Below, in pieces: positions 4,337 to 57,131 of a DNA stretch of 64,000 nucleotides. Both the position numbers and the translations under genes were made by a program. Numbering within the stretch: position 1 is the stretch's first letter; each line of letters begins with the position of its first letter. The stretch spans positions 4,302,231 to 4,366,230 of the forward strand of contig NC_134033.1 in assembly GCF_964204645.1 (NCBI RefSeq), written 5' to 3'. This DNA is from Tubulanus polymorphus. Taxonomy: Eukaryota; Animalia; Nemertea. Below the pieces are notes generated by a model that saw nothing but the letters and a program-made list of their open reading frames with translations, was not told the DNA's origin and ran no database searches.

Positions 4337-5477
4337 GTTGACTTTCTCCTCGATCAGTTTAACTCTAACCACAGCGAATAGATTTTAATCCAATTAATGT
4401 TGGGCGCTTCCGAGTGAGTGAGAGAGAGAGCGGTAGAGAGGATGAGTCAGACTACACGGCGCTCATTAAAAATTAAATTCGATAATCTACGAAACCGAGT
4501 GATGATTAACGAGATTAAAAATCTTATTCGATATTCAGTGCCTCGTCATTTCTATATTTATATATCTACATACAATTTTAAAATGTCCTTCGTCCAGTGG
4601 TAAACCGACAACGCTACTGCGGCAAGCGAGGATTCAGAGATAATCCTCCAGGTGTCGCTAGTGGCAATGGGTTACCGCACTGCAAATTTATTTTTCACAA
4701 GAGACCCGCGCATGCGCTGTATTAAAAACCACGACTATCAGACGATCCTAATTTTGATTGTTGATAGAAACTGGCGGCTTTTTTGATAGTAGTTATTCTA
4801 TCTATAGAGAGTCCGGAACGTAAGGGCATGAGGTTTATAACACAGGGTCGAAAGGGTCAGAGTTAGGTTTGGGTTCGAGAAGGCTTAGGTTTAGGATTAG
4901 GGTTTTAACGGGAAAAACAATAGGAACAAATGTAATAAATGTAGATATAGTTAAAAGTTGCTTAGCCGGCACTCGAGCTTCTGTGTTCAAATCCCATTCT
5001 GATCTGTCAACTTCGAATTTTCCAAGACGACTAAACACACTGAAAAACTGATAAAGATAATTATCTAAGAACTATTTTATTATGTTAATGTGATGATACC
5101 TTATCTGCTGAAAAGTGAACTGCAATAAACCATTAAGCGGTTTCTAGCCGACATTTTGTTAGGGTACTTTTGTCCCGTATTGTTGGTCATTTTATTCTCT
5201 TTTTTAAAATCCATTTGTGACGCGTGTTTTATCACGTTTTTTTGGTCCATTGATGGAATTTGACAGTTTTAACAACATTTAAACCGTATGAATCTATAGT
5301 TTTCAGTGATGCAAAAGTCAGCTCCCGAATTTGAAACAATGCGACACGAAAATGAAATGAAAAACGGTGGTCAGTTTTTGACACCGACATAAAAATCTTT
5401 TTTTTGAAAAGTGAAGGGGTTATCACTAAAACAGCATTGTAGAGGAAATAAGTTATAATCATTCATCAATACTATCA

Positions 5478-8400: not shown

Positions 8401-11400
8401 TCCCGCTTTATTCCAATTGTATCGTTTTGTGAAGATGCATTAAAATCGTTTCTTTCTGTTTCACAAATGAATGTCGTGTGCGTCTCCTCGATTTGACACG
8501 GGAATCGAACCCAGTTCGCTGATCCTCGTGGATTATTCAGTATCATCGCCGTACACGGCATATTGACGTCATTTATCGGTTGTTTTCTTAGCGGAGATAT
8601 CAATCCCCGAATAACTTCTGGTATCGTTTCATTAACAGCAGCAGGTTTAAACCATTCTGCGTAACTGAACGGTTTACCGTCAGACCACGAGTAATAACCA
8701 CTGGACTCCTTTAAAAACAAACAAACAAATATTTGTTATACGTTCATTGCAGAAAACCCTTTTTGGATTATTTTCTGTGTTCTAATCATTTCGGGAATAA
8801 TTTAATATCTTGACACATGACAAGAATATAAATCGTAATCATCGAAGTTCTATTAGATGATTAATATTTGATATGAATATTACCTGCCATTTCAATCCAA
8901 TCATCACAATAAGCGCCGCCTGTGAATATGCCTCATGAAGCAGTTTTGTAGCGAACAGCATTTTAACGGCCATCATTTCACGTTGAGAGTTGATACTGAG
9001 GAGATGTCCTCCATATTTCTGTTGACAGTAAATTTCAGCGTTCTCCCAATTCAGAAGTTCGTGTTTGATGTATCTAATACACGAAACGCCTGAATCTAGA
9101 AAATCTGATCGGCAGCCATTGATTCGGTGTTTCAGTAAAGGCGATTGTTTGGAAAATAAATTGTTCCGATCATCAAATATTTTGATAATTTGTGTTAGTA
9201 ATATTGATCCCCTTGTGCGGGTACCAACAGATTCGGAGCATGATGTTTGTCCGATAAATTTAAACAGGAATCTGATGTAATGATTTATATTTTTGTCAGT
9301 AGGAAAAGAGAAACTAAAGAATATAGTTTTCGGGGTTGATAATCCAGGGAAGTTCGGTGACTGCACGAGTCCACAATGATCAGCGTTCCTTGAAATTCCA
9401 CCCATAAACCGTGGAGCCGGTTGACTTGGTTTTAATTTCTGACATTTACGTCGTAATACAATCATTAGTGGTGAACTCCAGAATTTATATTTAGTGCTTA
9501 ACAATTTCACATGGTTTAATACGAGACTGGTGTTTAACACTTGACTATCGAGACTTATCACTGAACAGGGATTCATAGCTGTACGATGACATCTGTCAAT
9601 TTGATATTCGTGTTCTGATAATACATCAATATTTCCAATCGGTAGGCGTCGATTTCCAGGTGTAATCACGAGACAATATGACGTCATTGTGATTTGTCGT
9701 TCTCCTTCCTGTAGAACATACCCGTCACAATCAGTTGGAACTAATTTTAGTCTACCAGATCCCAGTAGATCAAGCCAGTTGTAAGCGTATGCTACTACAG
9801 TAACCGGTCCACCTGATGTAATCAGGCTGACGACAGATCGACCGTAGTATGAACCAGGACAATACGGACCATAGCGTCTAGCTGAGAAATTACTACCATC
9901 AAATATATAAAAACCAGCTCGATCACAATTCTCCGATAAAATGTTCAGTTTTAATCTGCGTGATAAATGCTCATAGATGTCGATTTTCGAGCTGAGTGCA
10001 AATCTACTGATACGATATTGTAACTTCTGTTTCGGATAACGGGGGAACAGACTGTCATGGTACAGTGAATGAGTATTTCTAACCTACAATAGATGCAAAC
10101 ATAGAGTAAATCATCGGTATTCAATAAATGTTCATTCCGTATTTTCCTTTGCCCTTTAACCGACAAATATTGCAACTCTGCCGTTAAAGGGTCATTGACT
10201 TATGTACGATCAGGTTTGATTTCAAAAAATTACGATTCATGTGAATTCTACACATTATTTCATCGTTGATAAAACAATTTCAAATCAATACAATGAATTG
10301 AAGATATATTTTAATGCTGTTTTAACTCACTTTTTTATCTTCCACTTTGACGTCTGTTTCCTTCAATGATTCTATTTTGTATTCGATCGATGTTGAATTC
10401 CTCAACGATTTTTCGGAAAGATTCTCTGATAACAGTAAACACAATATCACGAGAAATCCGTCAGATTTTACGCCTAACGATTCCAGGTAGTTTTCGCCGA
10501 GTAAAATATTAGTTCCGACAACCGTTAAACCTTCCAGTTTATAAACACCGATGACGTCACCGGAAGTGACGAGATCACGTGACCAGTTGAAGACGACGTA
10601 CTGCAGTATTTCAGCTGTGATAGACCAGCAGTATAAGCGTTTAGACCGAGTTATTACGTGCGGCCTATCACCAGGAATGAGCACTCCGGATTTGTTTTTG
10701 CAGATCGGAATCGATGGATTAGAAATATTCCAATCTGATATCCTATACATATTTACGGATAGTCTAGTTTTGAGAGTCAATCGGGCTGAAAAAGTGACGA
10801 TAGCTCTGTTAGTTTTAGTGTAAATAGAGATGGGCGGATGTCCGGTTTGTTCCCGTATATTCATTATAGGTTCACTTGTGTTCCATCCGTCATAAATTTG
10901 AACGGTCAAATTCAAACCTGGTTGTTTTATTCTGAAATCTGTTTCCTCAAAAGTCAAATTCATACCTAAACCCTCTGATATCCCGGACCACTCGAGCTGC
11001 CGGAAATTACATATTCCATACATGTCGATAGCAAATTTATTACCAGTTTCAAAAGTTTGCAATTGTTTTATTCGGTAGGACGAACAGTGGTGAACAGACT
11101 TCAGATGCTTTTCCTCCAAACGATAAAATACATAAACTCGACTTCCTTTCACAACATCATTTACATCACTCTTAAACATCAACGATAATGAATTACTGCG
11201 GTAAATATCTAACTGTTTTCCATCACCGCACAGCAAGTTATCAGAATCGCTGATGCGAAGATAGTTATCTCTACAGAATATAGACGGCTCGATGTCGTAG
11301 TAAACTTGGACGCGAAAGGTGCCCGGTAAAGAACTGTTGACGAACCAACGACATTCAACACCGCGCGTAAACGACGGATAATTCGGTGAAACGATGTAAC

Positions 11401-11548
11401 CGGACGTAGAATCGAGTGAAAACCACGTATTGTTACACCGTGAACTGACAGTTACAGACGGTTGATCGGTAGAGATCCGATCAGTCGTCTGAACCGACGA
11501 CAGTTTCATTAGTAGAATGAGTAATAACGTTAAGAGACTGCGCGTCAT
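5478..11548 (-). CDS. GRL101-like LDLa/LRR GPCR with N-terminal CUB-like and C-type lectin domains, copy B (intact, ~1882 aa, 3 exons)
   Basis: Exons 11548-10331, 10083-8884 and 8708-5478, all phase 0 with GT/AG, join into one open frame. Motifs: signal peptide MTRSLLTLLLILLMKLSS; CUB (GYIVSPNYPS..CRW); CTL split by intron 2 (MIGLKWQ|ESSGYYSWSDG..FICE); second CTL (CLRGW..CYQI); ~7 LDLa (CDxxxDCxxxSDE); LRRNT CPNYCKC; LRRs; hinge FCC..DQFSSCSDL; 7TM with CWLP and NPLLY. Confidence 0.92.
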
Positions 11549-11919
11549 GTTGACATTCTCCTCGATCAGTTTAACTCTAACCACAGCGAATAGATTTTAA
11601 TCCAATTAATATTGGGCGTTTCCGAGTGAATGAGCGAGAGAGAGAGAGCGGTAGAGAGGATGAGTCAGACTACACGGCGCTCATTAAAAATAAATTCGAT
11701 AACCTACGAAACCGAGTAATGATTAACGAGATTAAAAACCGTATTCGATATTCAGTGCCTAGTCATTTCCTTATTTATATATTTATACATACAATTTTAA
11801 AATGTTCTTCGTCCAGTGGTAAACCGACAACGCTACTGCGGCAAGCCAGGATTCAGTAATAATCCTCCAGGTGTCGCTAGTTGTACTGGGTTACCGCACT
11901 GCAAATTTATTTTTCATAA

Positions 11920-12364: not shown

Positions 12365-13034
12365 TAGCCGCCATTTTGTTAGGATACTTTGTCCTGTATT
12401 GTTGGGTCAATTTATTCTCTTCTTTAGAATCCATTTGCGATGCATGTTTTATCATGTTTTATTGGTCCATTGATGGAATTTGACAGTTTTAACAACATTT
12501 AAACCGTTTGAATCTCTAGTTTTCAGTTATGCAAAACTCGTATCTCAAATTTGCAACAATGCGACATGAAAGCGATATGAAAATCGGTGGTCAGTTTTTG
12601 ACGCGCTCATAAAAATCCAGGGTGTTGAACTTCGATGTTCGTTATTTTCAGAAATAATTTTCTAAAAATTTCATATCAGGAACTGTGCGCATAAACGCCC
12701 CATTTCAAATGAGAATAACACCCATATACTGGAATACAGGCATAGAAAACAGCGCCGAAACTAAGAATGATAAGATGCGCTGCAGTTAAATGGCTATAGG
12801 ATGAAAACTAGCGAAGATATCTTGAGATTGTAAATTTCGTTTGTAAGGGGGCATTTATGCACACAGTTCCTGAAATGTTTGAATTTTTTAGGAAATCATT
12901 TCTGGAAAATAATACAGTTAAGTACCCTGGATTTTTATGCGCGCTTTAAAAAACTGACCGCCAATTTTCAAATTCCATCAATGGACCAAAGAAACGTGAT
13001 ACAGGACAAAAGTGCTCTAACAAAATGGCGGCTA
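12365..13034. mobile_element. Foldback/MITE-like element with long imperfect terminal inverted repeats
   Basis: Left arm (tagccgccattttgttag...tggtccattgatggaatttga...ggtcagttttt...cataaaaatccagggt...caggaactgtgcgcataaa) is mirrored by the right arm (tttatgcacacagttcctg...accctggatttttatg...aaaaactgacc...aaattccatcaatggacca...ctaacaaaatggcggcta). Single-arm remnants at ~5143-5398, ~43381-43625 and ~51181-51325. Confidence 0.75.
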
Positions 13035-13074
13035 TAGTAACTGTACGTTTTTTGAACCTTGTTATCACGAGTTC

Positions 13075-15050
13075 GTATCCCTTGTGAATGAGAAGTCGAG
13101 AGAAGCGGGAGGTCCTGGTACTGAAATAAATACCACAGACAAATTACTTATAAAATACGAATTGACATCTACTTGAAGACGACAACTAACAGCATTTCTA
13201 ACTGTTTAATGGATCTACAGTAAAAAAACATGTTTATCACAATATTCCTGTGTTTGAATTGACGATTAAGAGTTTATTAGATTGAGGGATTTTACCTGCA
13301 CACAAAGTCTGTATAGTTAGTCTCGGACTAGTCAGACTCGCAGTTGATATAAGTCGACTGTTCACTAATTTCTGTAGTCTAACAGCTATCCGATACCCGG
13401 TATTAGGAGTTGTAACCGTTACAACAGGTTATCAAAGCCAGATGGCTATAGTGCGCGTGGACCTGGTTACCACCGAGATCCCGTGTGAACTCGCGTATCA
13501 TAATCGTTAACACGTTTATAATTTTTGTTTTTAACTAGTTTAAGACTGTGCCTGTTCTCTCGTTTGTATATTTTTTTCCTTTTTATAGTAACATTTTGAC
13601 AGTTTGTAACATTCTCAACAGATTGAGTAATCATAATTAGTTCCCAGCCTGATTTTGGATAAAAGCCGTAACAAATTTCCTGTAAAATCAGTTCATCTTT
13701 GTAAGCCTGATGGTGCACGTCTCTCCGCTAAATAAATCGATATAGTCTGAAGAAAGGCCTTGCAGTAGGTCATTGCATGACAAAGGGACAGGACGACGAC
13801 TCTGCCTCGCTTTTGCCGCTTCAACCAGGGAACGCTGTTGACTCTGCCCGACTCGCTAATTTTGCCTCTGCCCGGTGACCCGCCTGGCTTTGCTTCTACC
13901 TTGACGACCCACCTGGCTTCTGCTTCAGCCCGGCCCCTTGCTTTGCTTCTGTCCGAGAACGAATACAGTCCTCCTCGCTCAATGGCTTCCTCACTCCCCA
14001 TCGACTGTCAGTGGAGTGAGCCCGAAACCCCGTGGTGTTGGACCGAGAACTCTCCCAACATTAGGAGTTAGACCAGTAATTGTGTGATGTGTAAGGACTC
14101 CTGCAGTTTCCTGTTTAGTCCTAGTGTTTTCTGATATCTTACGATAAACGACTTGATACTGAACGCTGACAGTACCCCGTCTTGAATCTACTACAGAACC
14201 CGAGTAAGCTGTCCAACTGACTTTTACACTGTTATCTGTCAGCGCAGACCTTGTTAATTGAGAAAACAACTTCAATTCTGAAAAAGAAATCGATGTTAAT
14301 ATCAGGTGAATCAAACAAAATAAAGGGTAAGGATCTTTTACTTTGGGTTTTTTTGACTTGATACATTTTGTATTCATATTGGTTACTATATTCAGGGAAT
14401 AGGGAGTGAGATTCTTAGGAATCTATGATTCAGTGTAATATATACCTGACTCGCACCATTTTCCGATGTAATTCTGTGAACAGCCAGATTCACAGATACC
14501 ACTCAAATAGTTACAACTTTCACTGTTGTAACATCTACATTCAATCATACATCCAAATGAGTTCGATCCCTTACTACAATCACAATCTCGCCTACCCCTG
14601 TTCTTGTGTTGAACGGTGACGTATTGTCCAACTAGAGGACCTGGGCTGCATGCTAATGTTTTATGTTTACCACAGAGGGGGGCCCTGGTAAGCACGTTTC
14701 TGGTTAGAAATAAACATATTCGGGTTATTTCCGACTCGAATTTCCAAATTGCGCGCACGTTTTTCTGAGAAAAATTAAGAAGCTTTGAAATATGACAGAT
14801 TACTCCATGAAAAGAGGAAATTAATGCACGAAATCAGGGAAGTTGAAGATTGCTTTGTGTGCAAAACAATTTTGTTCAAATTCTTTTGAAGAAGAAATAT
14901 GAAAATGAATTCATTGTTTTCGACAGGCGCACGGCCCCTAGAAATTTAAAGTTATCGACTGAAAATGTTGACACGTTGAAAAAGTTGATTCAAATTTTCC
15001 AATAACGTATTTTTTACAATGTTTTCATCCTTGGATACCACAGACACACA
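13075..15050 (-). pseudogene. Partial duplicate of the RPTP ectodomain exons (F-lectin exon 4, EGF exon 5, FN3 exon 6, start of exon 7)
   Basis: Colinear and highly similar to ~22912-24750. The FN3 exon is interrupted by a solo LTR, exons 4 and 5 are fused by a deletion at ~14585, and there are no signal, TM or PTP exons. Confidence 0.9.
13408..14060 (+). mobile_element. Solo LTR (TGTT...AACA-type termini, 5-bp TSD; BEL/Pao- or copia-like)
   Basis: TSD ttagg at 13403-13407 and 14061-14065. Termini (a)gttg...caaca; the twin copy at 51702 starts tgttg. Internal aataaa at ~13730. The empty site is visible in the intact gene at ~23186. Confidence 0.8.
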
Positions 15051-18150: not shown

Positions 18151-21100
18151 CTAACTAAGGTTCACATAAGTGTCGAATCTTTGTAAATAGAATATCATCA
18201 AATCATGTAGAAACTTGTACTGTTCCTATAAATACGAAAACAAGAAAAATACATCAATAACATTACTCGTGAGAATACAAAGAAAATCGATTAATTTCTT
18301 ACCAAATTGGGAATGAATTGAGGTCGAGTCATTCGTAGTTTTTGTATGCAGTGATAAATGTCGATTTGTTCGCTAGATGGTGCCTTGGTGATCAGATCAA
18401 ATGCCGCGCAAAATAGTCCAGTTCTCGTTGTGCTGTCCCTGTAAAATTTACATTATCGTTGAAATATGTGATATTGTTTTGAACAATTGACTGTTGTTGC
18501 TAAGATACGAACATGCAATGTACAACAATAGGACTGGTCACATGTTCACTTGTAACTAATTTCACAAACTCGAATAGATATTGTACATCAGGAATTGACT
18601 CATCCTCAGGCCATCCTAAAAACTGGATCTGACGAATCTGACGCGATTCCTGTGAAATCAAAGAAATACAATTGATCTGATCAGGTCATAGTAAATAGCA
18701 ATGTCGAAGGAAATTCCGAAAAATACAGCCACCTATCTTTGAAAGGATGATACCGAAAAAAACTCAACATACATTCTGTTTTTGGAGGATCAGATCCCGG
18801 CGACCGATGGTCTTACAGAGCAGTGAAACTTCCTCCACAGTGATCGTAAAAGGATCGAATTTGATGCTTCCAAATGCAGGACTATAGCTTGCATATGTCT
18901 GAAATCAGAAGATGTATTTAGGAGATATCTAGCTAAGGCAGTGCTATACAATAGGAGTAGCCTTACTGGATCTATACTAAGCAGTGCTGCACTTAAGAAT
19001 AAGCCTTACCGGATCTTGTGGATATTCTTGATGCATCATTACGATAAGTTCACAGTTATAATCAAAGATCATTTGCCAGAAATCAGTAATTGTCTTTTGT
19101 AGTGGACTTTGTGTTGCTATAAACACACTGGCATCTGTGATCGTCTGTAAAAAGGAAAGTATTTTCCATTAGATTCTTACAAGTTATCGATGTCTCACCT
19201 AAAGAATATCTTGACTTAATGCCCCTCCACCAGAACTGCCCAGATATTCTACGGATGGCTATCAAATCAGAATCAAACTCACGTGCACAAATGAAGCATT
19301 AATGAACCCTTTTTGTGAGAGTTGCGGTTGATACTGTGCCTCAGGAAGGATGTCTTTGTATCGGGACTTGTTAACATTGTTGAGTAGTTTGGCCACTGCT
19401 AGTGATTCCTCGTCTTGAATTGGAGTCGACGCCTTCAAAACCTGCATTAGAAACCAACTCATTGAGAAACCTTTCTCCTTAAAACCAAATCAAGGTGACA
19501 CCATTTGGACACAAGGAAAAACGCTTCGGTTAATGATTTAATTGCTGCCATCCTAACTTTTGGCCAGGATCGAATCCTGCATCTCATTTTGGCCGATCTT
19601 AATACGTACTAGAAATTGTTCCTCTATTTTATCGGATACGTTTTTAGATACAGGACGCGTTGCCTTTCTTTCCTCGTATGATTCTCTGAAACTCGTGGTC
19701 GGGTATGCCACCGGTCCCAGTACCAGTTCCTCCAGTAGGATCTGGTGCACGAGAATGTACTGTTTCTAAAGTAGATAGTAATAAAGGAACACGTTGAAGT
19801 TTTCCATTTTGGAAGCGTGAAATGAGAGGCAGTAACTTTATTAAGATTTACCATATTTTGGATCATTTCTGGTCTTTGTTGTCGCAATTTCCTAGACATG
19901 TCGAATACGTTAACGAGTCCATCTTTCTTAGCTTTTTCAAGAAGCTGCTCCGTTGCGATATAACAACCTGTCCTTCCAGCACCAGCACTGAGAACACAAC
20001 ACGAACAATAACATTTCTCAACTTGTCCTTAACGGTAAAGGACTGGAAGATTTTCGAATTAATATACCTGCCATGAAGCAGCACAAGTCCCTGATCCGGG
20101 TCGGTAAGACGCTGTTTGATGAACTGTTGCATACGAACAAGAGATGAAGCCGGGAACGGTACATCATGATCCGGCCATCCTCGATAGTGACAAACTAACA
20201 GATTATGTGCTTGTTTGTGGCCACGCTATAACATTAATGAAACGTTACTCATCGGGAGAGATTAATCATTTGTAATACTAATGTGATACAAGGTATTGAA
20301 ATAGAGCCTCGTCAGCATGTTGTCAAAATCGATATCTGAACCAAGCTTATATAGATAGCAGAAATACCAACACCTTAGGCCACTCAGGGTAAAGCAATGG
20401 CATGATCATTACCTTTGTAATGGACAAGAAATGTACGGCAGCCGGAGGTTCAGTGTGTTTTTCCATTTTCTTTGCAACTTTTACTGTTATATCTCCATAT
20501 CGACCTTTCGTGTTCAGTTTTGTTGGCCAATATAAATGACACTTCACCTGCAAGTTAAAAATCAAAGGTACTTATTTTTCTACATTTTGCCTGTTTACGC
20601 TTCAGCATCTTAGATTATTTGTACAACCTTCTTATCTTTGCCTTGTCCTTCAGTCAGATCAGTGAGTACAATAATAGCTGGACATTTCTCTTGCCAAATC
20701 ATCCGCCAATGGTCATTGATTGTAGATGGCAATGGAGCTGAAAGAGCAAGTAAGATGGGTGAGCGCACAAGTAACACGAAACAATTGAATCATGAGACTT
20801 ACCCTGGCAAGCAATACATATCACATGACCAGCTAATCCCTGAAAAATGAAATTCAGAATTTCGGTTTATATACAATAGGAGGACAGGAAAACCATTGCA
20901 AGAGCATAGAAGGATTGATTCCTTACCCGAATATAATTGGCATTGATGTAATCTGATGATGGATCTTCACCGGTTTGTTCCAGAACAACTCTAGTCGAAT
21001 CATCTAGAAAAAACCACTCAAAGTCAATGAAAGTCAATAGAGATGTTTCACAAGGAAACTCTTGTATTTACGAAAGAACCTATGTCTATATGATGAACAG

Positions 21101-24100
21101 GCAATACTTACAGGCCAATATGTTTGGAAACCTGTTTTTCTCAGCATTTCCCACTTTCTCAGCGCAGACGCTCAATCCTCGTCTCAACGTAAGAACACTC
21201 TAAAGACAAAAGAGATCCAGAATATAATCATATGTCTTACCCACCAGCAGTCCCAACCTCCCTACAATTCTACCTGAAATTCTTCATTCATATTCTTCCA
21301 CGCATCAGAGCTCTTCATTAAGGTTTCTCCCAACAGGTCACAAATCATAGTAGCGCCTTTAGAAGCGATTTCGTAATGGTGATCCTCGCCATCTTGCGTT
21401 TCATCTACAGCATTCGGATCGTCATAGATATTGGAATCCATGGAGCTTTCTATATAGACAGGAATCATAGTGTTAAAACATAATTAGGCTTCAACTTTAC
21501 AAAACCTCACGGTCTTGAGACAAACCTCTTGAAAATGCAGAGTTTGCATTAGCTGTATTTTCTTGCCTCGATGATTTAGGACAATTCACATAAACAGCCT
21601 CTGCTTCTTCTCTCGCCAAAGGTTTTTCAATATTTTTATCGGAAGGTGAAATATTCCCCATCGATATTTCTACATTGTGCGATGTTCCTTTTGTTTTGAA
21701 TCCACCACGTCTGAAGAGTTAAGGCGTCCATATAATAATGAGTAACTGAATGAGGGGGTTACTTTTGTGAGAATAGGGGCATTGGGCGATTGTCAAATGA
21801 TTTGCATTGGACTATAGAGGTCGCCACTATTAACTCGTACCTCCAAACAATACATAGAGCAACAGCAACCAATAATAGTATTAAAACAACTGTCACAATG
21901 CCACCTATTATCCCTGCCTTACTAGACGGTGCTTTAACAGTGATTCTCTCTTGCTGTTGTTGTATTGGCGGATAATGCTGAAACGTTTCCTGAAAGATCA
22001 AAGAGAAATGGCTGGAGACACCTCCAATTTGTAAAATCCAATTTCCATTAAAAAACACATGAACTCACTCCGTTATAATTGACAATGATTCCTAAAATAA
22101 AACTGTAAGATTTCCCAGTTTCTAGAGGAGCATTAAAGTAACCACTATAGTTACGCGCATCGCCAACCATAAACTCAGAAGGGACTTCCGGTGGTAGAAC
22201 TGCAGTAATATAAACTGATAATCCTCGCTGTTTAGCTTCTCCGTACGAGACGTACTGTGATTGGTTGACTGCACGATTCCGGCGACGGTTGATTGGTCCA
22301 TCGTGTTTCTTCACGATCACCTCGAAACCGCTGAAAATCAGAGAAAAATTGTTTTATAAGATCATGCGTTATTTATAAATGAAAAAAAGAGGACACTTAC
22401 GTGATGTTACCAGTATTAACACGTGTTATTTGAAGTGTAACAGTCGTGTCTGTTACCGCTGCTTTCTTGACAACCAGTAGGGGAATTGCTATTTCACCTG
22501 AAATATCAGTAAGCGACAATGTTGACAAGTGACATCAATGAATACTTGAGGTCATTGTGTTCAAATTACTCACCTGTCCAAAAGCTTACACTGGCAGGCG
22601 ACCCTTCACCTTTTCTATTCAAGGCAAACATTGAACAGTTGTATCGAGTAAAAGGTATCAGTGACGTCGTTATGTCTAAAGTTGTGATGGAGCCTACGAT
22701 TTTAGGTTTGTTGATTGTTTTTATGTCTATTAAAGGTGTTGTGGAAGTTGTACTGATGGGTTCACACGTGAGCTGAAAACAGATAGGGACATGTAACAGT
22801 ATAGAGCAGGTGGTGCCCTCTACTGGACAGGACAAGTTAATTCCTACCCGATAATAGATGACATCACAATTTGGACTATTTGGTGCTGTCCCTGTCAATG
22901 TTGTTTTCAATGTATCCCTTGTGAATGAGAAGTCGAGAGAAGCGAGAGGTCCTGGTACTGAAATAGATACCACGGACAAATTAAGTAATGCGATGTGAAT
23001 TGACATCTACTTGGTGACGACAGCAACATCTTTAACTCAGTTAACAGTTTAAGAGTTAATTAGAATGAGGGGTTTTACCTGCACACAAAGTCTGTATAGT
23101 TAGTATTGGACTAGTCACAATCGCAGTTGATATAAGTTGACCGTTCACTAATTTCTGTAGTCTAACAGCTATGTTATACCCGGTATAAGGAGTTAAACCA
23201 GTAATTGTGTGATGTATAAGGTCTCCTGTGGATTCTTGATTAGTCCAAGTGTTTTCTGATGTCTTACTATAATCGACTTGATACTGAACGCTGATATTAC
23301 CATCACGTCCTGAATCTACTTCAGTACCCGAGTAAGCTGTCCAACTGACTTTTACACTGTTATCTGTCACCGCAGATTTTGTTAATTGAGAAAACAACTT
23401 CAATTCTGAAAAAGAAATCGATGTTAATTTCAGGAGAATTAGATAAAATAAAGGGTAAGGATCTTTTACTTTCGGTTTTTTGACTTGGTGTTATTTTGTA
23501 TTCATATTGGTTACTATATTCAGGGAATAGGGAGTGAGATTCTTAGGAATCTATGATTCAGTGTAATATATACCTGACTCGCACCACTTTCCGATGTAAT
23601 TCTGTGAACAGCCAGATTCACAGATACCACTCAAATAGTTACAACTTTCACTGTTGTAACATGAATAACATTCAATCATACAACCAAATGAGTTCGATCC
23701 CTTACTACAATCACCGGGTGCTAAACAGAAATTCAAATTTGATACGAAAAATATGAATCGTTCGATCTTTCGGAAATATATTCTCATTACAAGTCACTGA
23801 ATGTTTTTATGAATCGATCTAATTTTAACAATAATATAATCCATAAATGAATGGGTGCTTAAAACAAAATTTTGGTAATAAAGGGAGACTTCTTTTCATT
23901 TCAAAATTTTTCGACCGGGGGTAAATTCTATATACAAGTCACTGAATATTTTCGAGAAAAGCAAAATCTATTTCCATACTCTTTATAGTTTACACACATA
24001 TATAGTCATGTAAACTTACCGATATATTTGAACCCGATAACTTCTATTTCTGCCAGTACGAGATACTCCGCCTTACCGATGTTCTCGTGTTGAACGGTGA

Positions 24101-27100
24101 CGTATTGTCCAACTAGAGGACCTGGGCTGCATACTAATGTTTTATGTGTACCACAGAGAGGGGGGCCCTGGTAAGCAGATTTCTGGTTAGAAGAAAATAT
24201 ATTCGGGCTATTTCCGACTCGAATCTCCATGTTGCGCGCGCGTTTTTCTGAGAAAAAATTAAGAAGCTTTGAAATATTGCAGTTAACTCCGTGAAAACAA
24301 AATTATGCACGAATTCAGGGAAGTTGCAAATTGCTTTGGGTGCAAAACAATTCTGTTCAAGTTCTTTTGGAAAATAAGTTAAGGGGCCGTGCATAAAGTA
24401 CGTTCGCTTGACTTCCGGCTATTTTAACCCCTCCACTTCCACCCCCCTGCGTACATATAAGAGACCCCCTGTGAAACTGAATTAGACAGGATTCATGCTC
24501 TAAACAAGGAAAGCAGAGAATGGGAAATTCCCAGGAAATTTTACGAAATATAGGCCTATAAATAAATAGTAAAACCTTAAGAAAAAGCATGTACACTACC
24601 CCCCCCCCCCTCCCTACAGGCGCACGGCCCCTATCACAAATTTATAGTGATCGACTGAAAATTCTGGCACGTTGGAAAAGTTGATTCAAAATTTTCCAAT
24701 AACGTATTTTTAACGATGTTGCCATCTATGGATACCACCGACACATTGTTGTGGACAGATTATTGATCATTGACGACTCAGAGTTTGATATTTCGGTAGA
24801 GTTCAATATTCCAACTCATCTTGGTTAAACGTAGGGTAACTGAAAACAGTGAGAAACTGAGTCCGGGATATTTAGAATCCATCTATGATTGGTTAGTTTT
24901 GAAGATATTCCATCTACAAGACGGAATTTATATTCAACGAGACTTTTCCAGCTAGTTGAAAGTAGTATTTTTTCAGATTTGACCGAAATAATCAATGAAA
25001 TAATCAACAATAATAATTTGTACTCACTCCACGCGTCTCCAGGGTTATCGGTGCAACCAGTCGCGTCTGATCTATCCCAAAGTGTAACTTCATGTATCAC
25101 GTATTGAGTTCCGAGATCAATTCTAGTCCAGGCGTCTTGATGCTCACCAGTGAGACACAGATCATGATAAGCTACCGTTTGACCATCTGTACATTTACTA
25201 CCGTATGACCCGGAGTAAACGGATGACATCGTAACTGTTTTACCACGAGCCACGTTACCTACACAACACATTTTGTGAATGATAGATTTGAATTATTTCA
25301 CGATTTTTCAAAACATACAAAAACTAGAAAGAAACTTTTTAATAGGACGACGACAGAGAATAGAAATTATAAGTGGCACTCAGGTTGAATAGGTTGGTTG
25401 CTAAGGCTTACACACTGTAGTGCTTTTCAAACACATTTACAAGTCAGGTCCAAACGAAGTTCCACTGTTAGACAAAGAGTCTAACATATAATGCAAGTTT
25501 AAGGTATTACAGAGATTTAAGGCAAAACGGAGCAGTTAGCATCCTGCAAGTTTGAAAACTAGAGGGAAAAAGGTTCCGAGGCTCGATATATTGTAAGCTC
25601 GATCAACAAAATCGTTGTCGGTATGGATTGATATTGCCTTACATACAATTAGAGGGGTTGAGAAACGAAGGTATCATTTTAGCCATCGGTGCATGTTTAA
25701 TTAAAGTTATACTTACCATGACCACCGGACACAGTCGCCTCGGCACAATCGCCAAGAACCCGTGACATAGGCCAATGACCATGCAGTTCATGGGGTACAA
25801 GCTTCACATGCATGAAGCTGTTCTCAGACTGAACCATAGGCCAACTGCTAACTGTACTCTTAGGGCCTGGAGCTAGTCAAACGATCGACCAAGTGGAACA
25901 GAATGAATATTTACCAGCAGTCTCATAAGAATTCTTACATGATATCTTAAAGATTGATTATGGGAATCTTTCACTGGAAAAACTTTTGATAGATCAAGGA
26001 GAATGATACAAAACAGTGCGACGAGGGTGTAGGCCGGTTACTGACGAGTAGTTACCTAATCGTTGGTGGTTAAAGCTTTTATAATCGGATGTTTGTGAAA
26101 ATATCCGAACGTGAGACTAATATGGCTACAGTCGAAATTAAAACTAGTTACTGACGAAATAAAATTACCGACTTAAAGGTTTTAATGGTTTCACAAAAGG
26201 AATTTTTTCTAGTAAAAGTTATCGTGAATAATATTTCTTTTGCTAATTCAAGACCTTTTTGATATAACGAGCGTGTGGATTGTAGCCTACGCGCGACCCG
26301 CTCCATAAAACACTAACTAATACTGATACATAAACGGTGATCGCCGCGTATGTAAGTCGATATTGCCTACGGGACTGTAACTAATGTTATCGACGCGCGA
26401 TTTCATCACTGTGCCGCAAACTAGATACACATAATCGGGCTCTAAAAACGGATCGCTGACGCGAAAGTCCAAAAGAATTAATGACGATAAATCATTTTAC
26501 TCTCTTTGACACTTGAGGTATGTTCTGATTTACATCGAACAGGGATGACGGTCTATCAATACGCATAGAACTGTCTGACAAGAGGAAAAAAGAAAAAAAA
26601 GAGAGAAATAAAAAAAAAAAAATAGTAAGATAGTTATCAGCGTTGCTCGACGTACGAGTATCGATTCAACAGCAGCTGATGTTGAATCGATGTAGCACGT
26701 GTACTCGCCGAGTCCATATCACCAATGCGTAAACATTCAATTAATCCGCTGACACACATACACTATGAAAATACCGAACTTTCTGGCAATGATGACAAAA
26801 TAAATGCCCCGATATTTATCTACGGAAATATAGAGATTTAAATCATTATAGGCCTATGTAAAGTGTCATTTTAAAAATGTATGCGTGGCACTATTTTAAG
26901 CGCGGACTAATACAGATTTACGCCTAGACAGGGTCGGCACTACTTCAGAATTTCAATTTTTTTATTTCGGCAATATTTAATTAACCAAGTAACAAAAATT
27001 CTCCACAAACGAACTCAACCTTCTATGTTTCAAATTTAAGCGACTGTGAAAGTTTCAGACGCGTACGTTAAACGGACGTAATCGTTTGACGTGACGGATT

Positions 27101-28095
27101 TTACTATAACAATAGGACGACGTGTACTATGTACCGTCGTCCTAACAAATTAATTCAAAGTTATATCATTGATTTCATCTAGTATGATCTAAATCATCAA
27201 ATGGGATGATATTGTATCCCTTTTACCACGAGCCACGTATTCACAAAACACATTTTGTGACTAAAAGAGTTGAAATTATTTCACGAATTTTCAAAACGAA
27301 CAAAAACGAATTGATTCAAAGTTATTTCATAATTTCAACTAGAATTAAACAAAACTAACATATTTTTTCTTTACGCGATGAAATAATTAGAGTTGATGTC
27401 AGTTCGTTGACAGTTCCCGGGTGTTTCATAAATCAATGATATTTTTACTAACATATTTTTTCTCGCTTATGGATTAGTGACGTTAATCCGTATACGGATT
27501 AGTTTTAGTGTTATTCGGTTAATCTGAGATAAATCTAATGAAATTTACATCATTCGTTCCTATTTCTTTTAGATTAATTTTTGTAAAGGCTTTTATGGAG
27601 CTAATCCGTTAATTTGATATAAGGCAGAGATATTTGACCTGATTCCGGTTTACTGGAGCAGAAACAGTTGATATAGAAAACTTACCGATTTGACAAGCTG
27701 GTCCGGTCCAATATGACTCACATGCAGTGTTAGTATTTGGACACTTTAAAGCGCCATCTATATTCTGTCCCTTTATTGGACATAGGTCCACGGCTGTATT
27801 ACTGCAATGACACTCCCAACCAGTACAACTCTTCCCAAAACATTTCGCTGAAATGACAAAAAGAAGATTATTTTACAAAAATAATCTCCTAATGCTGTTC
27901 TCCAACAATAATTCTCTTCTTTCTCTGGTTATCATCGGTGCTCTCTTATGGATTGAAATCGTACAATTTACGATTTCCGCATTTTTTACAACTCTGGAAC
28001 CAACGATTATTGATACACTCACCTGATGTGTTTGTGATGAATAAACATAGAATCAACAACAACAAAAAACGAAAGATGTTTCTTTTACGGTACAT
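18151..28095 (-). CDS. Receptor-type protein tyrosine (pseudo)phosphatase: SP, Cys-rich module, F-type lectin, EGF-like, 3 FN3, TM, PTP D1 (C>G), PTP D2; 26 exons, 1366 aa
   Basis: Exons: 28095-28023, 27847-27686, 25258-25028, 24247-24020, 23720-23574, 23405-23079, 22957-22574, 22497-22401, 22330-22069, 21989-21841, 21710-21511, 21449-21274, 21199-21112, 21003-20927, 20839-20803, 20737-20628, 20547-20413, 20225-20068, 19987-19852, 19765-19610, 19441-19283, 19144-19010, 18898-18773, 18649-18513, 18438-18303, 18225-18151. All GT-AG and phase-compatible, 4101 nt. D1 motifs: KNRF, DYINANY, WRMIWQE, KCHLYWP, WPDHDVP, HGSAGAGRTG, RQQRPEMIQ. D2 motifs: FINASF, DFWQMI, WPE, VHCMDSTTRTG. Furin-like RRRNR in the third FN3. 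Confidence 0.92.
24383..24631. mobile_element. Small MITE with GGGGCCGTGC TIRs (PIF/Harbinger-like) in RPTP intron 3
   Basis: ggggccgtgc at 24383 and gcacggcccc ending at 24631, flanked by taa/tat. The family assignment is by TIR resemblance only. Confidence 0.55.
25324..27144 (-). mobile_element. Non-autonomous Helentron/Helitron-like insertion (~1.8 kb) in RPTP intron 2
   Basis: Sub-terminal repeats taggacgacg (25343, 27113) and the inverted copy cgtcgtccta (27135-27144). CTAG terminus at 25324-25327. Inserted in an A/T run with no evident TSD. The uninterrupted paralogous site is at 27219-27345. Confidence 0.6.
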
Positions 28096-29936: not shown

Positions 29937-30890
29937 CTAAAATATATAAAAGACACGACGTTTCGATCTCACCCTAGAGATCATCGTCAGGTGTGAGATA
30001 AAGACTAAAAACAGGGTTATATATACAGAGGAGGACAGGTTAATTGAGTAAATTGGTGAGTGAATAAGTAATTAGTGTTTGGCAAGGCATGAAGTAATAT
30101 ACTTAGAAAGAAGGGAATTGTCCGGAGAAAAGCCATTATCTAGATTGGTATTTATAACTGAGTGACGAGTAATTAGGGCAGACTCAACTATGGGGCATTT
30201 AGTGTAATTGCTGGAAGTATAAATAATTTCGGCTTTATCAAAATTAAAACGATGACCAGTGTTCCAAACGTGATTGGCTACGCCACTAGCCGGTTTTTTG
30301 ATTTATCATATCCTTTTTGTGTTCCGAAATTCTAGTTTTTAAATCACGACCAGTTTCTCCAAAGTAAATTTTATCACAGCCAAAACAAGGAATTTTGTAA
30401 ACTCCGCAGTCCAAAGGTTTAGATTGATTGTTTTTAACCAAAATCTTACTAATTTTGTTTTCATACGTGAAAATGATTTTTTAATCCAATAAAGGGAGAC
30501 AGTGACGAAACTTTTGCAAAACAGGTACATACGGAACTACAATGAACTCTGAAATGTGTTTTTTATTTTCTGGAGGTTTAGAATTGAAGAAGGTACGTTT
30601 AGCCTTAGAAATAGCGATTTTCAAAATGTGATCAGGGTAAGCCAATTTTCTAAGAGAGTTGGATATATGGTCAAATTCAGCCGAAAGGAAGGTTTCATCG
30701 CAGATCCGCAGTGCACGGAGAAAGAGGCCTTGAGCGAGACCAATTTTGATTGATTTAGCAACAAACGAAAAGAAGTGAAGGTATGCCTCGGCGTTGATAG
30801 GTTTGCGGTAGACTGAGAAAATCAAATGAGAAAATGTATTGTGAATTAGAACATCTAAAAACGGAATTTGGTCATTTTGTTCCCATTCAA
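29937..30890 (-). mobile_element. Penelope-like retroelement, 5'-truncated (RT C-terminus, GIY-YIG endonuclease, 3' end)
   Basis: Translation EWEQNDQIPFLDVLI..FSVYRKP..YLHFFS..LFLRALRIC..LAYP..VVPYVP, then in a shifted frame GVYKIPCFGCDKIYFGETGRDLKTRISEHKK..HVW..GHRFNF..VESALI, followed by a hammerhead motif. Confidence 0.9.
29953..29995 (-). ncRNA. Minimal type I hammerhead ribozyme in the Penelope-like element 3' region
   Basis: Minus strand reads cACAC CUGACGA U GAUCUC uagggu GAGAUC GAAAC GUC^ GUGU: conserved core CUGANGA/GAAA/UH, 6-bp stem II, 4-bp stem I and a loop-less palindromic stem III (ACGU). Confidence 0.85.
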
Positions 30891-51120: not shown

Positions 51121-51364
51121 AGTGCAAATTGAAAATTGACTTTTATCGAATTCAAAGTTATTTTCATCATACTGACAATTAGAAAATCATTTCTGAAAAT
51201 AATGCAGTTCAGCTACCTGGATTTTTATGCGCGCTTTGAAAAACTGACCACCAATTTTCAAATTCCATCAATGGACCAAAGAAACGTGATACAGGACAAA
51301 AGTGCTCTAACAAAATGGCGGCTATAGTAACTGTACGTTTTTTGAACCTTGTTATCACGAGTTC

Positions 51365-53629
51365 GTATCCCTTGTGAATGAGAAGTCGAGAGAAGCGGGA
51401 GGTCCTGGTACTGAAATAAATACCACAGACAAATTACTTATAAAATACGAATTGACATCTACTTGAAGACGACAACTAACAGCATTTAATTTCTAACTGT
51501 TTAATGGATCTGCAGTAAAAAAACATGTTTATCACTATTCCTGTGTTTGAATTGATGATTAAGAGTTCATTAGAATGAGGGATTTTACCTGCATACAAAG
51601 CCTGTATTAGTTAGTCTCGGACTAGTCAGACTCGCAGTTGATATAAGTCGACTGTTCTCTAATTTCTGTAGTCTAACAGCTATCCGATACCCGGTATTAG
51701 GTGTTGTAACCGTTGCAACAGTTTATCAAAGCCAGATGGCTATAGTGCGCGTGGTTGCCACCGAGATCCCGTGTGAACTCGCGTATCATAATCGTTAACG
51801 CGTTTATAATTTTTGTTTTTAACTAGTTTAAGACTGTGCCTGTTCTCTCGTTTGTATATTTTTGTACTTTTTATAGTAACATTTTGACAGTTTGTAACAT
51901 TCTCAACAGATTGAGTAATCATAATTAGTTCCCAGCCTGATTTTGTATAAAAGCCGTAACAAATTTCCTGTAAAATCATTTCATCTTTGTAAGCCTGATG
52001 GTGCACGTCTCTCCGCTAAATAAATCGCTATAGTCTGAAGAAAGGCCTTGCAGTAGGTCATTTCATGACAAAGGGACAGGACGACGACTTTGCCTCGCTT
52101 TGCTGCTTCAAGGGACAGGACGACGACTCTGCCTCGCTTTTGCCGCTTCAACCAGGGAACGCTGTTGACTCTGCCCGACTCGCTAATTTTGCCTCTGCCC
52201 GGTGACCCGCCTGGCTTTGCTTCTACCTTGACGACCCGCCTGGCTTCTGCTTCAGCCCGGCCTCTGCTTTGCTTCTGTCCGAGAACGAATACAGTCCTCC
52301 TCGCTCAATGGCTTCCTCACTCCCCATCGACTGTCAGTGGAGTGAGCCCGAAACCCCGTGGTGTTGGACCGAGAACTCTCCAAACATTAGGAGTTAGACC
52401 AGTAATTGTGTCATGTGTAAGGACTCCTGCAGTTTCCTGATTAGTCCTAGTGTTTTCTGATATCTTACGATAAACGACTTGATACTGAACGCTGACAGTA
52501 CCCCGTCTTGAATCTTCTACAGAACCCGACTAAGCTCTCCAACTAACTATTACACTGTTATCTGTCAGCGCAGACCTTGTTAATTGAGAAAACAACTTCA
52601 ATTCTGAAAAAGAAATCGATGTTAATTTCAGGTGAATCAAACAAAATAAAGGGTAAGGATCTTTTACTTTGGGTTTTTTTGACTTGGTATCATTTTCGAT
52701 TCATATTGGTTACTATATTCAGGGAATAGGGAGTGAGATTCTTAGGAATCTATGATTCAGTGTAATATATACCTGACTCGCACCACTTTCCGATGTAATT
52801 CTGTGAACAGCCAGATTCACAGATACCACTCAAATAGTTACAACTTTCACTGTTGTAACATCTACATTCAATCATACATCCAAATGAGTTCGATCCCTTA
52901 CTACAATCACCGGGTGCTAAACAGAAATTCAAATTTGATACGAAAAGTAAATATGAATCATTTGATCTTTCGGAAATATATTCTCATTACAAGTCACTGA
53001 ATATTGTTATGAATCGATCTAATTTTAACAATGATATAATCCATAAATGAATGGGTGCTTAAAACAAAATTTTGGTAATATAGGGAGACTTCATTTCATT
53101 TCGAAATTTTTCGTTCGGGGGTAAATGCTATATACAAGTCACGGAATATTTTCGAGAAAAGCAAAATTCATTGCCATACTCTTAATAGTTTACACATATA
53201 TATAGTCATGTAAAACTTACCGATATATTTGAACCCGATATCTTCTATTTCTGCCAGTACGAGATACTCTCGCCTACCCCTGTTCTTGTGTTGAACGGTG
53301 ACGTATTGTCCAACTACAGGACCTGGGCTGCATACGAATGTTTTATGTTTACCACAGAGAGGGGCCCTGGTAAGCACATTTCTGGTTAGAAATAAATATA
53401 TTCGGGTTATTTCCGACTCGAATTTCCAAATTGCGCGCGCGTTTTTCTGAGAAAAATTAAGAAGCTTTGAAATATGACAGTTTATTCCATGAAAAGAGAA
53501 AATTAATGCACGAAATCAGGGAAGTTGAAGATTGCTTTGTGTGCAAAACAATTTTGTTCAAATTCTTTTGACGAAGAAATATAAAAATGAATTCATTGTT
53601 TTCGACAGGCGCACGGCCCCTAGAAATTT
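51365..53629 (-). pseudogene. Second partial duplicate of RPTP ectodomain exons 4-7
   Basis: Near-identical to 13075-14947 but retains the exon 4/5 intron. Carries the same solo LTR. Ends abruptly at gcacggcccctagaaattt. Confidence 0.9.
51702..52386 (+). mobile_element. Solo LTR (twin of 13408-14060)
   Basis: tgttg...aaaca with TSD ttagg (51697-51701, 52387-52391). tataaaag at ~51946, aataaa at ~52019, and a short internal tandem duplication at ~52070-52150. Confidence 0.82.
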
Positions 53630-56960: not shown

Positions 56961-57131
56961 CCTGCCCCTGCCCCTGCCCCTGCCCTTGCCCCTGCCCCTG
57001 CCCCTGCCTCTGCGCCTGCTCCTGCCCCTGCCCCTGCCCCTGCCCCTGCCCCTCTCCCTGCCCCTGCCCCTGCCCCTCTCCCTGCCCCTGCCCCTGCCCC
57101 TGCCCCTGCCCCTGCCCCTGCCCCTGCCCCT

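What the first reader, a model, noticed from the sequence alone, without database searches (positions are those of the whole stretch)
20060..20080. Receptor phosphatase with catalytic Cys replaced by Gly in D1: an intact F-type-lectin receptor pseudophosphatase
Seen: the codon at 20072-20070 (minus) is GGC, giving LLHGS|AGAGRTG instead of HCSAGxGRTG. The WPD loop, P-loop Arg and Q-loop (MIQ) are retained, and KNRY reads KNRF. D2 keeps CX5R (CMDSTTR) but has WPE and no Q-loop Gln (FIP), as in typical inactive D2 domains. All 26 exons are in frame. Known: Cys>Gly is the substitution in the STYX pseudophosphatase, and Cys mutants can bind phosphotyrosine without hydrolysing it. Inference: a catalytically dead pTyr-binding, decoy or scaffold receptor.
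Basis: partly seen in the sequence, partly recalled or inferred. Interest (0 to 1): 0.8.

Follow-up and report, generated by a model that had tools for sequence, protein, structure and literature searches.

The report
Ribbon-worm receptor phosphatase without catalytic cysteine
A ribbon-worm cell-surface receptor built like a tyrosine phosphatase has glycine where the catalytic cysteine should be, as do at least 16 sister genes, and selection still keeps the dead domain, so it most likely works as a non-enzymatic binding or decoy receptor.

Summary
On the minus strand, codon 20072-20070 is GGC. It is followed by a GT-AG intron (20067-19988) and gives H-G-S-A-G-A-G-R-T-G in the membrane-proximal PTP domain (D1) of a 27-exon, 1336-aa receptor gene (28095-18151). 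That gene is identical to an NCBI model from the nemertean Tubulanus polymorphus.

It is not an error or a rare allele. Seventeen paralogous loci in this genome carry the same CAT GGC AG|GT, and contigs from three public runs show no other letter there. One 2014 run has contigs spliced exactly at this intron.

It is not a decaying pseudogene either. Fourteen Gly-type genes keep an intact 1665-nt D1-D2 reading frame, with dN/dS about 0.25. The window's own branch is 0.27. Parts of the ectodomain evolve at about 1. D2 (HCMDSTTRTG, WPE, no first Q-loop Gln) also looks inactive. Three paralogues keep Cys.

Best reading: a lineage-specific family of double-pseudophosphatase receptors with F-type-lectin heads. 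It is analogous to human PTPRU (decoy/scaffold) and to STYX (Cys>Gly). pTyr binding is inferred, not shown.

The window's copy is the most derived: lectin His>Leu, WPD-loop Gly>Asp, D2 Trp>Ser.

The scan had already found this family on other DNA (s1-487531, s1-487582).

The parts
18151..28095 (-). Whole coding region of the receptor gene: 27 coding exons, 1336 codons plus stop. It equals public protein P0013 (NCBI 'receptor-type tyrosine-protein phosphatase kappa-like', Tubulanus polymorphus).
   Evidence: Exact threading of P0013 onto the window, all introns GT-AG. Name.
20070..20072 (-). GGC codon = Gly983 at the position of the catalytic Cys of D1 (H-G-X5-R)
   Evidence: Aligned opposite the Cys of solved PTP D1 domains.
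20068..20225 (-). D1 exon 19 (WPD loop to His-Gly-Se..). It ends 2 nt into the Ser codon.
   Evidence: 17 paralogous copies of this exon carry GGC.
19988..20067 (-). 80-nt phase-2 GT-AG intron right after the Gly codon
   Evidence: A contig of run X4 joins 19987|20068 exactly.
19852..19987 (-). D1 exon 20: P-loop AGAGRTG (Arg 19974-19972), helix alpha4, first Q-loop Gln (19860-19858)
19610..21199 (-). D1 pseudophosphatase domain, 8 exons (KNRF 21139-21128; WPDHDVP 20177-20157)
   Evidence: Pfam PF00102 at residues 800-1041 covers the full profile 1-234/234; whole-protein E 2e-117 over two matched stretches. AlphaFold model pLDDT 88.5. Best PDB fold matches PTPRK/PTPRT/PTPRM D1, rmsd 1.4-1.9 A.
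18151..19441 (-). D2 domain, 6 exons: KSRY, WPE (18613-18605), HCMDSTTRTG (18517-18423), RPQFIP. Trp>Ser at 18883-18881 is unique to this copy.
21841..21989 (-). Exon with the transmembrane helix (residues 637-661, 21917-21843)
   Evidence: Hydrophobic stretch followed by RRGGFK, read from the translation
24020..25258 (-). Two exons of the F-type lectin domain (25258-25028 and 24247-24020). The fucose-triad His is Leu here (CTC, 25154-25152).
   Evidence: PDB sequence hits FBP32 3cqo E 1e-8 and eel agglutinin 1k12 6e-5. CHT in all other paralogues, CLT only here.
27686..28095 (-). Signal-peptide exon (28095-28023) and Cys-rich EGF-like exon (27847-27686)
12950..14833 (-). Broken relic of the same receptor's ectodomain (lectin exon 2, EGF, FN3). 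It has a frameshift in the lectin exon and a deletion that fuses the lectin to the EGF module.
51200..53515 (-). Second relic of the ectodomain, with the same frameshift

Best explanation
SHOWN. The gene encodes a type-I membrane receptor. Its parts in order are: signal peptide, Cys-rich module, F-type lectin domain, EGF-like module, FN3 repeats, TM helix, and tandem PTP domains D1 and D2. In D1 the nucleophilic Cys is Gly. This state is encoded at 17 paralogous loci of Tubulanus polymorphus. Transcripts are spliced as predicted. D1 and D2 are the most constrained parts of the protein (dN/dS about 0.25). D1 is predicted to keep a canonical PTP fold.

FOLLOWS FROM ESTABLISHED PTP ENZYMOLOGY. 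Without the Cys thiolate no phospho-enzyme intermediate can form, so D1 cannot hydrolyse phosphotyrosine. D2 lacks the general-acid Asp (WPE), both P-loop glycines (C-M-D-S-T-T-R) and the first Q-loop Gln, so it should be inactive too. It has this in common with CD45-type D2 domains.

INFERRED. The receptor is a double pseudophosphatase. Its ectodomain senses a ligand (glycan or other). Its intracellular domains bind phosphoproteins or substrates without turning them over. It would then act as a decoy or scaffold that competes with, or modulates, the three Cys-bearing, presumably active paralogues of the same family. This is the role proposed for human PTPRU relative to PTPRK. The invariant P-loop Arg, WPD Asp, both Q-loop Gln and the KNRF aromatic residue in all 14 intact Gly-type genes favour a pocket that still holds phosphate or pTyr, as in Cys-mutant substrate traps and in STYX.
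For: GGC and splice sites. PTP identity: Pfam PF00102, E 2e-117, two domains. PDB alignments place Gly opposite the catalytic Cys. AlphaFold pLDDT 88.5, TM 0.80-0.85 to PTPRK D1.

Family-wide state: 17 loci with CAT GGC AG|GT, versus TGC in L016 and in more distant paralogues. RefSeq proteins P0009-P0018 all have HG[S/R]AGAGRTG.

Reads: no other letter at 20070-20072 in runs X1, X3 and X4, which come from two studies. X4 contigs are spliced at 19987|20068, 19765|19852 and 20737|20803. No difference is listed at the window-specific bases 20078 and 20164.

Selection: 14 genes have an intact 1665-nt D1-D2 frame. Pairwise dN/dS is 0.25 for D1 and 0.26 for D2. The window branch is 0.27 by three-point distances, equal to its sister side at 0.29. 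Ectodomain exons range from 0.34 to 1.1. Key pocket residues are invariant in 14 genes.

Precedents: PTPRU as decoy (PMC7320164). STYX HGX5R, with activity restored by Gly>Cys (PMC9464862).
Against: There is no biochemical evidence for this protein. Catalytic-motif sites are only marginally more conserved than other D1 sites (15/73 versus 72/226 variable, p = 0.075), so retention of a working pTyr pocket is not demonstrated. PTPRU itself has an occluded pocket and binds partners independently of pTyr, so a pseudophosphatase need not read pTyr. dN/dS of 0.25 is relaxed for a PTP domain. This particular copy has changed the conserved WPD-loop Gly (WPDHG>WPDHD), a D2 Trp and the lectin His. Expression evidence comes from assembled contigs of a run whose type is not on record. 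Many laid contigs come from paralogues. Gene conversion among paralogues can bias dN/dS and trees.
Confidence: 0.6

Rival explanations
1. Phospho-independent scaffold or adhesion receptor. The D1 pocket no longer binds phosphotyrosine. The protein works only through its ectodomain and through docking surfaces of D2 or the juxtamembrane region, or by pairing with and damping active paralogues.
For: The PTPRU precedent: an occluded pocket and phosphorylation-independent partner binding. Motif sites are not significantly more conserved than the rest of D1. The WPD-loop Gly>Asp in this copy may stiffen or misplace the loop.
Against: The P-loop Arg, WPD Asp, both Q-loop Gln and the P-loop glycines are invariant in 14 genes, and the P-loop/alpha4 exon has the lowest dN (0.019, dN/dS 0.16). 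The model keeps the canonical fold.
Confidence: 0.22
2. The family is functional, but the window's copy is a recently dispersed duplicate on its way to becoming a pseudogene. It would have an intact frame by chance and no function of its own.
For: It is the only intact member on contig C9. It lies among broken relics of the same gene and a retroelement fragment. It has 20 unique non-synonymous versus 10 synonymous changes, including the lectin His>Leu, WPD-loop Gly>Asp and D2 Trp>Ser.
Against: 27 exons are in frame with 26 canonical introns. Branch dN/dS is 0.27, the same as its sisters. A spliced contig shows no listed difference at window-specific bases. The count of unique sites is biased upward by gene conversion among the other copies.
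Confidence: 0.13
3. The receptor is still an enzyme. D2, which keeps Cys-X5-Arg, or some other residue would supply the activity.
For: D2 keeps His-Cys...Arg and the KSRY Tyr. D2 is as constrained as D1.
Against: The D2 P-loop has no glycines and carries an Asp (C-M-D-S-T-T-R). The general acid is Glu (WPE). The first Q-loop Gln is Pro. The same D2 occurs in the Cys-type paralogues, where D1 would do the catalysis. From my own knowledge, comparable D2 domains are inactive.
Confidence: 0.04
4. Artefact: an assembly or sequencing error, or a rare allele of a normal TGC codon.
For: None found.
Against: The same GGC occurs at 17 separate loci. No other letter appears at the codon in contigs of three runs from two studies. 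NCBI models of ten paralogues carry Gly.
Confidence: 0.01

Closest known systems
Human PTPRU (R2B receptor PTP), a receptor with two pseudophosphatase domains (Hay et al. 2020, PMC7320164)
   Same: A receptor with tandem D1-D2 in which D1 is also inactive. It has active paralogues with similar intracellular domains, and a decoy/scaffold role has been proposed. The best structural matches of this D1 are R2B D1 domains, and the membrane-proximal FN3 hits the PTPRU Fn3 family.
   Different: PTPRU keeps the catalytic Cys. It is dead because of a disordered pTyr loop, WPE and an occluded P-loop, and it remains redox-sensitive. Here the Cys itself is gone while the WPD, P-loop and Q-loop are canonical. 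The ectodomain here is F-type lectin/EGF/FN3, with no MAM or Ig domain. The gene here belongs to a tandem family of about 17 genes rather than being a single gene.
STYX (dual-specificity-phosphatase-fold pseudophosphatase, HGX5R)
   Same: The same single substitution, Cys>Gly, in the HCX5R signature. STYX binds phosphoproteins, and Gly>Cys restores its activity (PMC9464862).
   Different: STYX is a small soluble DUSP-fold protein, not a classical pTyr-specific PTP domain and not a receptor. The resemblance is convergent, not family membership.
Membrane-distal D2 domains of receptor PTPs (e.g. CD45, PTPRK D2)
   Same: Non-catalytic PTP folds kept for substrate recruitment and regulation. The D2 here has WPE and a degenerate P-loop like them.
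   Different: In known receptors the inactive domain is D2 and it usually keeps the Cys. Here the normally active D1 is the one that has lost it.
F-type lectins (fish FBP32, eel agglutinin AAA, bacterial fucolectin-related domains)
   Same: The ectodomain residues about 80-232 match them by sequence. Paralogues keep the His/Arg/Arg fucose triad.
   Different: As far as I found, an F-type lectin domain fused to a receptor PTP has not been described in a paper. In this copy the triad His is Leu.

Membership tests
Classical receptor-type protein tyrosine phosphatase (tandem D1-D2) | Two PTP-fold domains (Pfam Y_phosphatase) C-terminal to a TM helix | tested here: met
   PF00102, E 2.4e-117, two stretches. 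The model matches PTPRK/T/M D1 at rmsd 1.4-1.9 A. The TM helix was read from the sequence.
Classical receptor-type protein tyrosine phosphatase (tandem D1-D2) | Catalytic signature H-C-X5-R in D1 | tested here: not met
   H-G-S-A-G-A-G-R; GGC at 20072-20070
Classical receptor-type protein tyrosine phosphatase (tandem D1-D2) | WPD general acid, Q-loop Gln, pTyr-loop aromatic residue (KNRY) | tested here: met
   WPDHDVP, MIQ..KQY and KNRF (Phe for Tyr, also found in Cys-type paralogues)
Pseudophosphatase (pseudoenzyme of the PTP superfamily) | Homologous to active phosphatases but lacking an essential catalytic residue | tested here: met
   Cys>Gly in D1. D2 lacks the Asp, the P-loop Gly residues and the Gln.
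Pseudophosphatase (pseudoenzyme of the PTP superfamily) | A maintained gene, not a pseudogene (intact, expressed, under purifying selection) | tested here: met
   Intact 27 exons. Spliced contigs. dN/dS 0.25-0.33.
Pseudophosphatase (pseudoenzyme of the PTP superfamily) | No measurable phosphatase activity | not testable with these tools
   Needs a recombinant protein assay
STYX family | Small DUSP-fold protein with HGX5R | tested here: not met
   HGX5R is present, but the fold and family are classical PTP (PF00102), in a 1336-aa receptor
R2B receptor PTPs (PTPRK/M/T/U) | MAM-Ig-FN3 ectodomain | tested here: not met
   No MAM or Ig hit; an F-type-lectin-like domain, EGF-like modules and FN3 instead. 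Only the membrane-proximal Fn3_PTPRU family matches.
F-type lectin domain | Sequence similarity to solved F-type lectin domains | tested here: met
   3cqo E 9.9e-9, 4gwi 3.7e-5, 1k12 6e-5
F-type lectin domain | His-Arg-Arg fucose-binding triad | tested here: not met
   The His position is Leu in this copy (CLT), while both Arg residues are kept. All other paralogues have CHT.

The most novel reading that the evidence does not exclude
In a ribbon worm, a classical PTP catalytic domain has been converted by one Cys>Gly change into a phosphotyrosine 'reader' module. It was then amplified into a tandem family of about 15 lectin-headed receptors with fast-evolving ectodomains. This would be a lineage-specific recognition system (immune, self/non-self or gamete) that signals by holding and protecting phosphotyrosines rather than removing them, set against three still-catalytic paralogues.
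Probability: 0.25. Interest if true: 0.65.

Novelty: new variant of a known kind. Interest (0 to 1): 0.45.

Why it matters
Pseudophosphatases are known. So is one receptor with two dead PTP domains, human PTPRU. In those receptor cases the catalytic Cys is kept. Here the nucleophile itself is lost from the normally active D1 while the rest of the pocket stays canonical.

The variant has been multiplied into about 17 copies that selection maintains, next to three Cys-bearing paralogues. That gives a natural series: the same scaffold with and without the nucleophile, and many ectodomain variants. The series could be used to ask what a receptor PTP does when it cannot dephosphorylate, and whether a PTP fold can serve as a pTyr-binding module in vivo.

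The limitations are that the organism is not a laboratory model and that nothing has been tested biochemically.

Tried and rejected
1. Assembly error or rare allele: rejected.

2. Alternative splice site or alternative exon restoring Cys: no TGY is reachable, and there is no second copy of the exon on this contig.

3. KNRF as a sign of inactivation: rejected. The Cys-type paralogues and proteins of other phyla also have KNRF.

4. The close paralogue with TGC (L016/L040, contig C10) as evidence that Cys-type close relatives are functional: rejected. It lacks the TM and juxtamembrane exons and has frameshifts in D2, giving 5 stops. The tree nests it among the Gly copies with weak support. A tree with all Gly copies monophyletic is not rejected (AU p = 0.28), so a single T>G event is enough.

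5. Orthologues in other species: none found. The nearest non-Tubulanus proteins are 38-42% identical in the D1 region searched, and those whose motifs I checked keep the Cys. A search aimed at short transcriptome fragments also found nothing close. Nemerteans are poorly sampled, so this absence is weak evidence.

6. Branch-wise dN/dS by ancestral reconstruction: the machine refuses ancestral sequences. I did not try another route to them and used three-point distances instead.

7. The count of changes unique to the window (20 non-synonymous, 10 synonymous) first suggested relaxed constraint. The distance method does not bear that out.

8. Exon-only queries to the big representative search returned only 7 hits. 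They were useful mainly because they led to the public proteins.
Full report
OBSERVATION. Read on the minus strand, the window has CTG CTT CAT GGC AG followed by gtatatt. After ...ttctcag the next exon begins at 19987 with T GCT GGT GCT GGA AGG ACA GGT. The codon at 20072-20070 is therefore GGC, and the spliced product reads L-L-H-G-S-A-G-A-G-R-T-G. No nearby GT/AG combination can yield a Cys codon. Exon pieces given by reference hit Pfam Y_phosphatase. The WPD exon aligns to PTPRU, PTPRK and PTPRM D1, ending at the His that precedes the catalytic Cys.

GENE MODEL. I defined 17 cytoplasmic exons from the three-frame translation. All have AG/GT borders and a continuous frame from the TM exon to a TAG at 18153-18151. 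A search with the 52-aa exon and then a word search with a full-length relative identified the organism as the nemertean Tubulanus polymorphus. They also returned an NCBI protein, P0013 (1336 aa, 'receptor-type tyrosine-protein phosphatase kappa-like'). P0013 is encoded exactly by 27 coding exons from 28095 to 18151, with 26 GT-AG introns. The difference is a 75-nt in-frame, stop-free intron at 22847-22773.

HOW THE SPLICED MODEL WAS HANDLED. I never typed a joined sequence into any search tool. Whole-protein searches used the public record P0013, which is identical to the model. Exons were concatenated only inside scripts, for a translation check and for codon counting. Read laying was given 4101 letters.

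ARCHITECTURE.
- Signal peptide.
- Cys-rich module.
- A domain matching solved F-type lectins: FBP32 3cqo E 1e-8, eel agglutinin 1k12.
- EGF-like module.
- FN3 repeats, including the membrane-proximal PTPRU-type FN3.
- TM helix.
- D1 (residues 800-1041) and D2.

D1 has KNRF, WPDHDVP, HGSAGAGRTG and MIQ..KQY. D2 has KSRY, WPE, HCMDSTTRTG and RPQFIP. In PDB alignments the Gly lies opposite the catalytic Cys of PTP-epsilon and PTP-alpha. An AlphaFold model of D1 built on a 52-sequence alignment has mean pLDDT 88.5. It superposes on PTPRK, PTPRT and PTPRM D1 at 1.4-1.9 A.

NOT AN ERROR, AND NOT UNIQUE. A six-frame search of the window's own 268-Mb assembly with the WPD exon found 25 places. Seventeen of them, including the window, read CAT GGC AG|GT. 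Most lie in a tandem array on contig C12 at 1.07-1.47 Mb. Others are at C12 2.51 Mb, C7 and C9 (the window). One close copy on C10 and all more distant copies read TGC. The ten closest family proteins below the two Cys-type ones (P0009-P0018; P0013 is the window's own protein) all have HG[S/R]AGAGRTG. P0003 and P0008 have HCSAGAGRTG.

READS. Contigs of three runs from two studies cover the codon and show no other letter there. Run X4 (2014) has contigs that skip exactly 19988-20067, 19766-19851 and 20738-20802 with GT..AG ends, which means spliced RNA. Many 'other letters' in the laid contigs are paralogue states. However, no difference is listed at two bases unique to the window's copy (20078 and 20164), so at least some spliced contigs come from this locus. 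This is contig-level evidence, and the run type is not on record.

SELECTION. Projecting the window's exons onto 10-kb stretches of 20 paralogues gave 14 Gly-type genes with an intact D1-D2 frame of identical length (1665 nt) and no stops.
- Two further Gly-type copies (L026, L028) could not be projected over every D1 exon.
- The C7 copy is truncated after the P-loop exon.
- The Cys-bearing C10 copy lacks the TM and juxtamembrane exons and has frameshifts in D2, so it is a pseudogene.
- Pairwise Nei-Gojobori dN/dS among the 14 genes is 0.25 for D1 and 0.26 for D2, range 0.13-0.53.
- Ectodomain exons run from 0.34 to 1.1. The first lectin exon and the first FN3 are at about 1. The phosphatase-like domains are therefore the most constrained part of the protein.
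- The window copy has 20 unique non-synonymous and 10 unique synonymous changes. Three-point distances give its branch dN/dS as 0.27, like its sister side at 0.29.
- The WPD Asp, the His before the Gly, the Gly itself, the P-loop Arg and glycines, both Q-loop Gln and the KNRF Phe are invariant in the 14 genes. Motif sites as a class are only marginally less variable than other D1 sites (15/73 versus 72/226, p = 0.075).

HISTORY. The Gly copies plus the C10 pseudogene form a clade with 100% support, separate from the three Cys-type genes at C12 0.27-0.31 Mb. The C10 copy nests inside with weak support. Monophyly of all the Gly copies is not rejected (AU p = 0.28), so one T>G change suffices. 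Between the Gly and Cys clades, the block from the last 14 codons of the WPD exon through the P-loop exon has dS about 1.36. Flanking exons have 0.12-0.38. The genes are therefore mosaics. Either the flanks were homogenised by gene conversion or the block was imported, so the two active-site haplotypes may be much older than the array.

MECHANISM. Class I Cys-based PTPs need the thiolate to form the phospho-enzyme, so a Gly at that position abolishes catalysis. This is established enzymology. D2 lacks the general acid, the P-loop glycines and a Q-loop Gln, and is shared with the Cys-type paralogues, so it is not a replacement catalytic domain. The receptor is thus a predicted double pseudophosphatase.

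The closest functional precedent is human PTPRU. It has two dead domains, binds the substrates of its active paralogue PTPRK, and is proposed to act as a decoy (PMC7320164). The closest chemical precedent is STYX, with HGX5R and activity restored by Gly>Cys (PMC9464862).

I therefore favour a non-enzymatic receptor that binds phosphoproteins or substrates and competes with, or modulates, the three Cys-type paralogues. pTyr binding by D1 is plausible from the retained pocket but is not shown. A phospho-independent scaffold is the main rival.

THIS COPY. It is the only intact member on contig C9. It sits between tandem copies of an LGR-like gene and two broken relics of its own ectodomain. It alone has Leu for the fucose-triad His (CLT versus CHT), Asp for the WPD-loop Gly, and Ser for a conserved D2 Trp. 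It may have a shifted or reduced function, but its frame, splicing and branch dN/dS give no sign of decay.

NOVELTY. Literature searches found no description of a classical receptor PTP D1 with Cys>Gly, of an F-type-lectin receptor PTP, or of an expanded family of such receptors. No close homologue exists outside Tubulanus in the protein collections searched. I class it as a new variant of a known kind (pseudophosphatase receptor).

The scan had already reported the same family from other pieces of this genome (s1-487531, s1-487582). I reached the same reading independently before seeing those notes, and they are not independent evidence.

Noticed in passing
Proteins P0021/P0022 (T. polymorphus, contig C12; near loci L022/L023): More distant paralogues of the same receptor family keep the D1 Cys but have Trp in place of the invariant P-loop Arg (HCSSGCGWTG). 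This is a second, independent way of killing D1 in this species.
   Followed up: partly
window 19852-20111 (minus) versus loci L043-L045: The block from the last 14 codons of the WPD exon through the P-loop exon has dS about 1.36 between Gly-type and Cys-type genes. Flanking exons have 0.12-0.38. The family is mosaic, through gene conversion of the flanks or an imported active-site block.
   Followed up: partly
window 12950-14833 and 51200-53515 (minus): Two relics of the receptor's ectodomain (lectin exon 2, EGF, FN3). They share a frameshift, and one also has a deletion fusing the lectin to the EGF module. Each lies upstream of a copy of the LGR-like gene, so the relic was duplicated together with that unit.
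   Followed up: partly
window 1-11600, 36044-42320, 43952-50120 (minus): At least four tandem copies of a large gene with CUB-like, C-type-lectin-like, LDLa, leucine-rich-repeat and 7TM parts (LGR/relaxin-receptor-like), as long intron-poor ORFs. Domain names are read from the translations and were not searched. Another first-stage note (s1-500509) covers one of them.
   Followed up: no
window about 30000-30900 (minus): An ORF fragment with a GIY-YIG-like motif next to reverse-transcriptase-like sequence, which suggests a Penelope-like retroelement remnant just upstream of the receptor gene.
   Followed up: no
window 56915-57300: A long GA/GR-type simple repeat that translates as (GR)n, (GA)n or (GQ)n in the three frames.
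   Followed up: no
Proteins P0008, P0010, P0014, P0018: Some family members carry two F-type lectin domains and more FN3 repeats (1690-1836 aa versus 1336 aa here). The first lectin exon and the first FN3 evolve at dN/dS about 1.
   Followed up: partly
locus L040 (contig C10, 9.377-9.387 Mb): The only close paralogue with TGC (Cys) is a broken copy: no TM or juxtamembrane exons and frameshifts in three D2 exons. NCBI still models a 353-aa fragment from it (P0002).
   Followed up: yes
window 20141: The reference base here (giving Leu for Val, unique to the window copy) is replaced by the paralogue state in all three runs that cover it. Neighbouring window-specific bases are not. It is probably a private allele of the assembled individual, or a small conversion tract.
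   Followed up: partly
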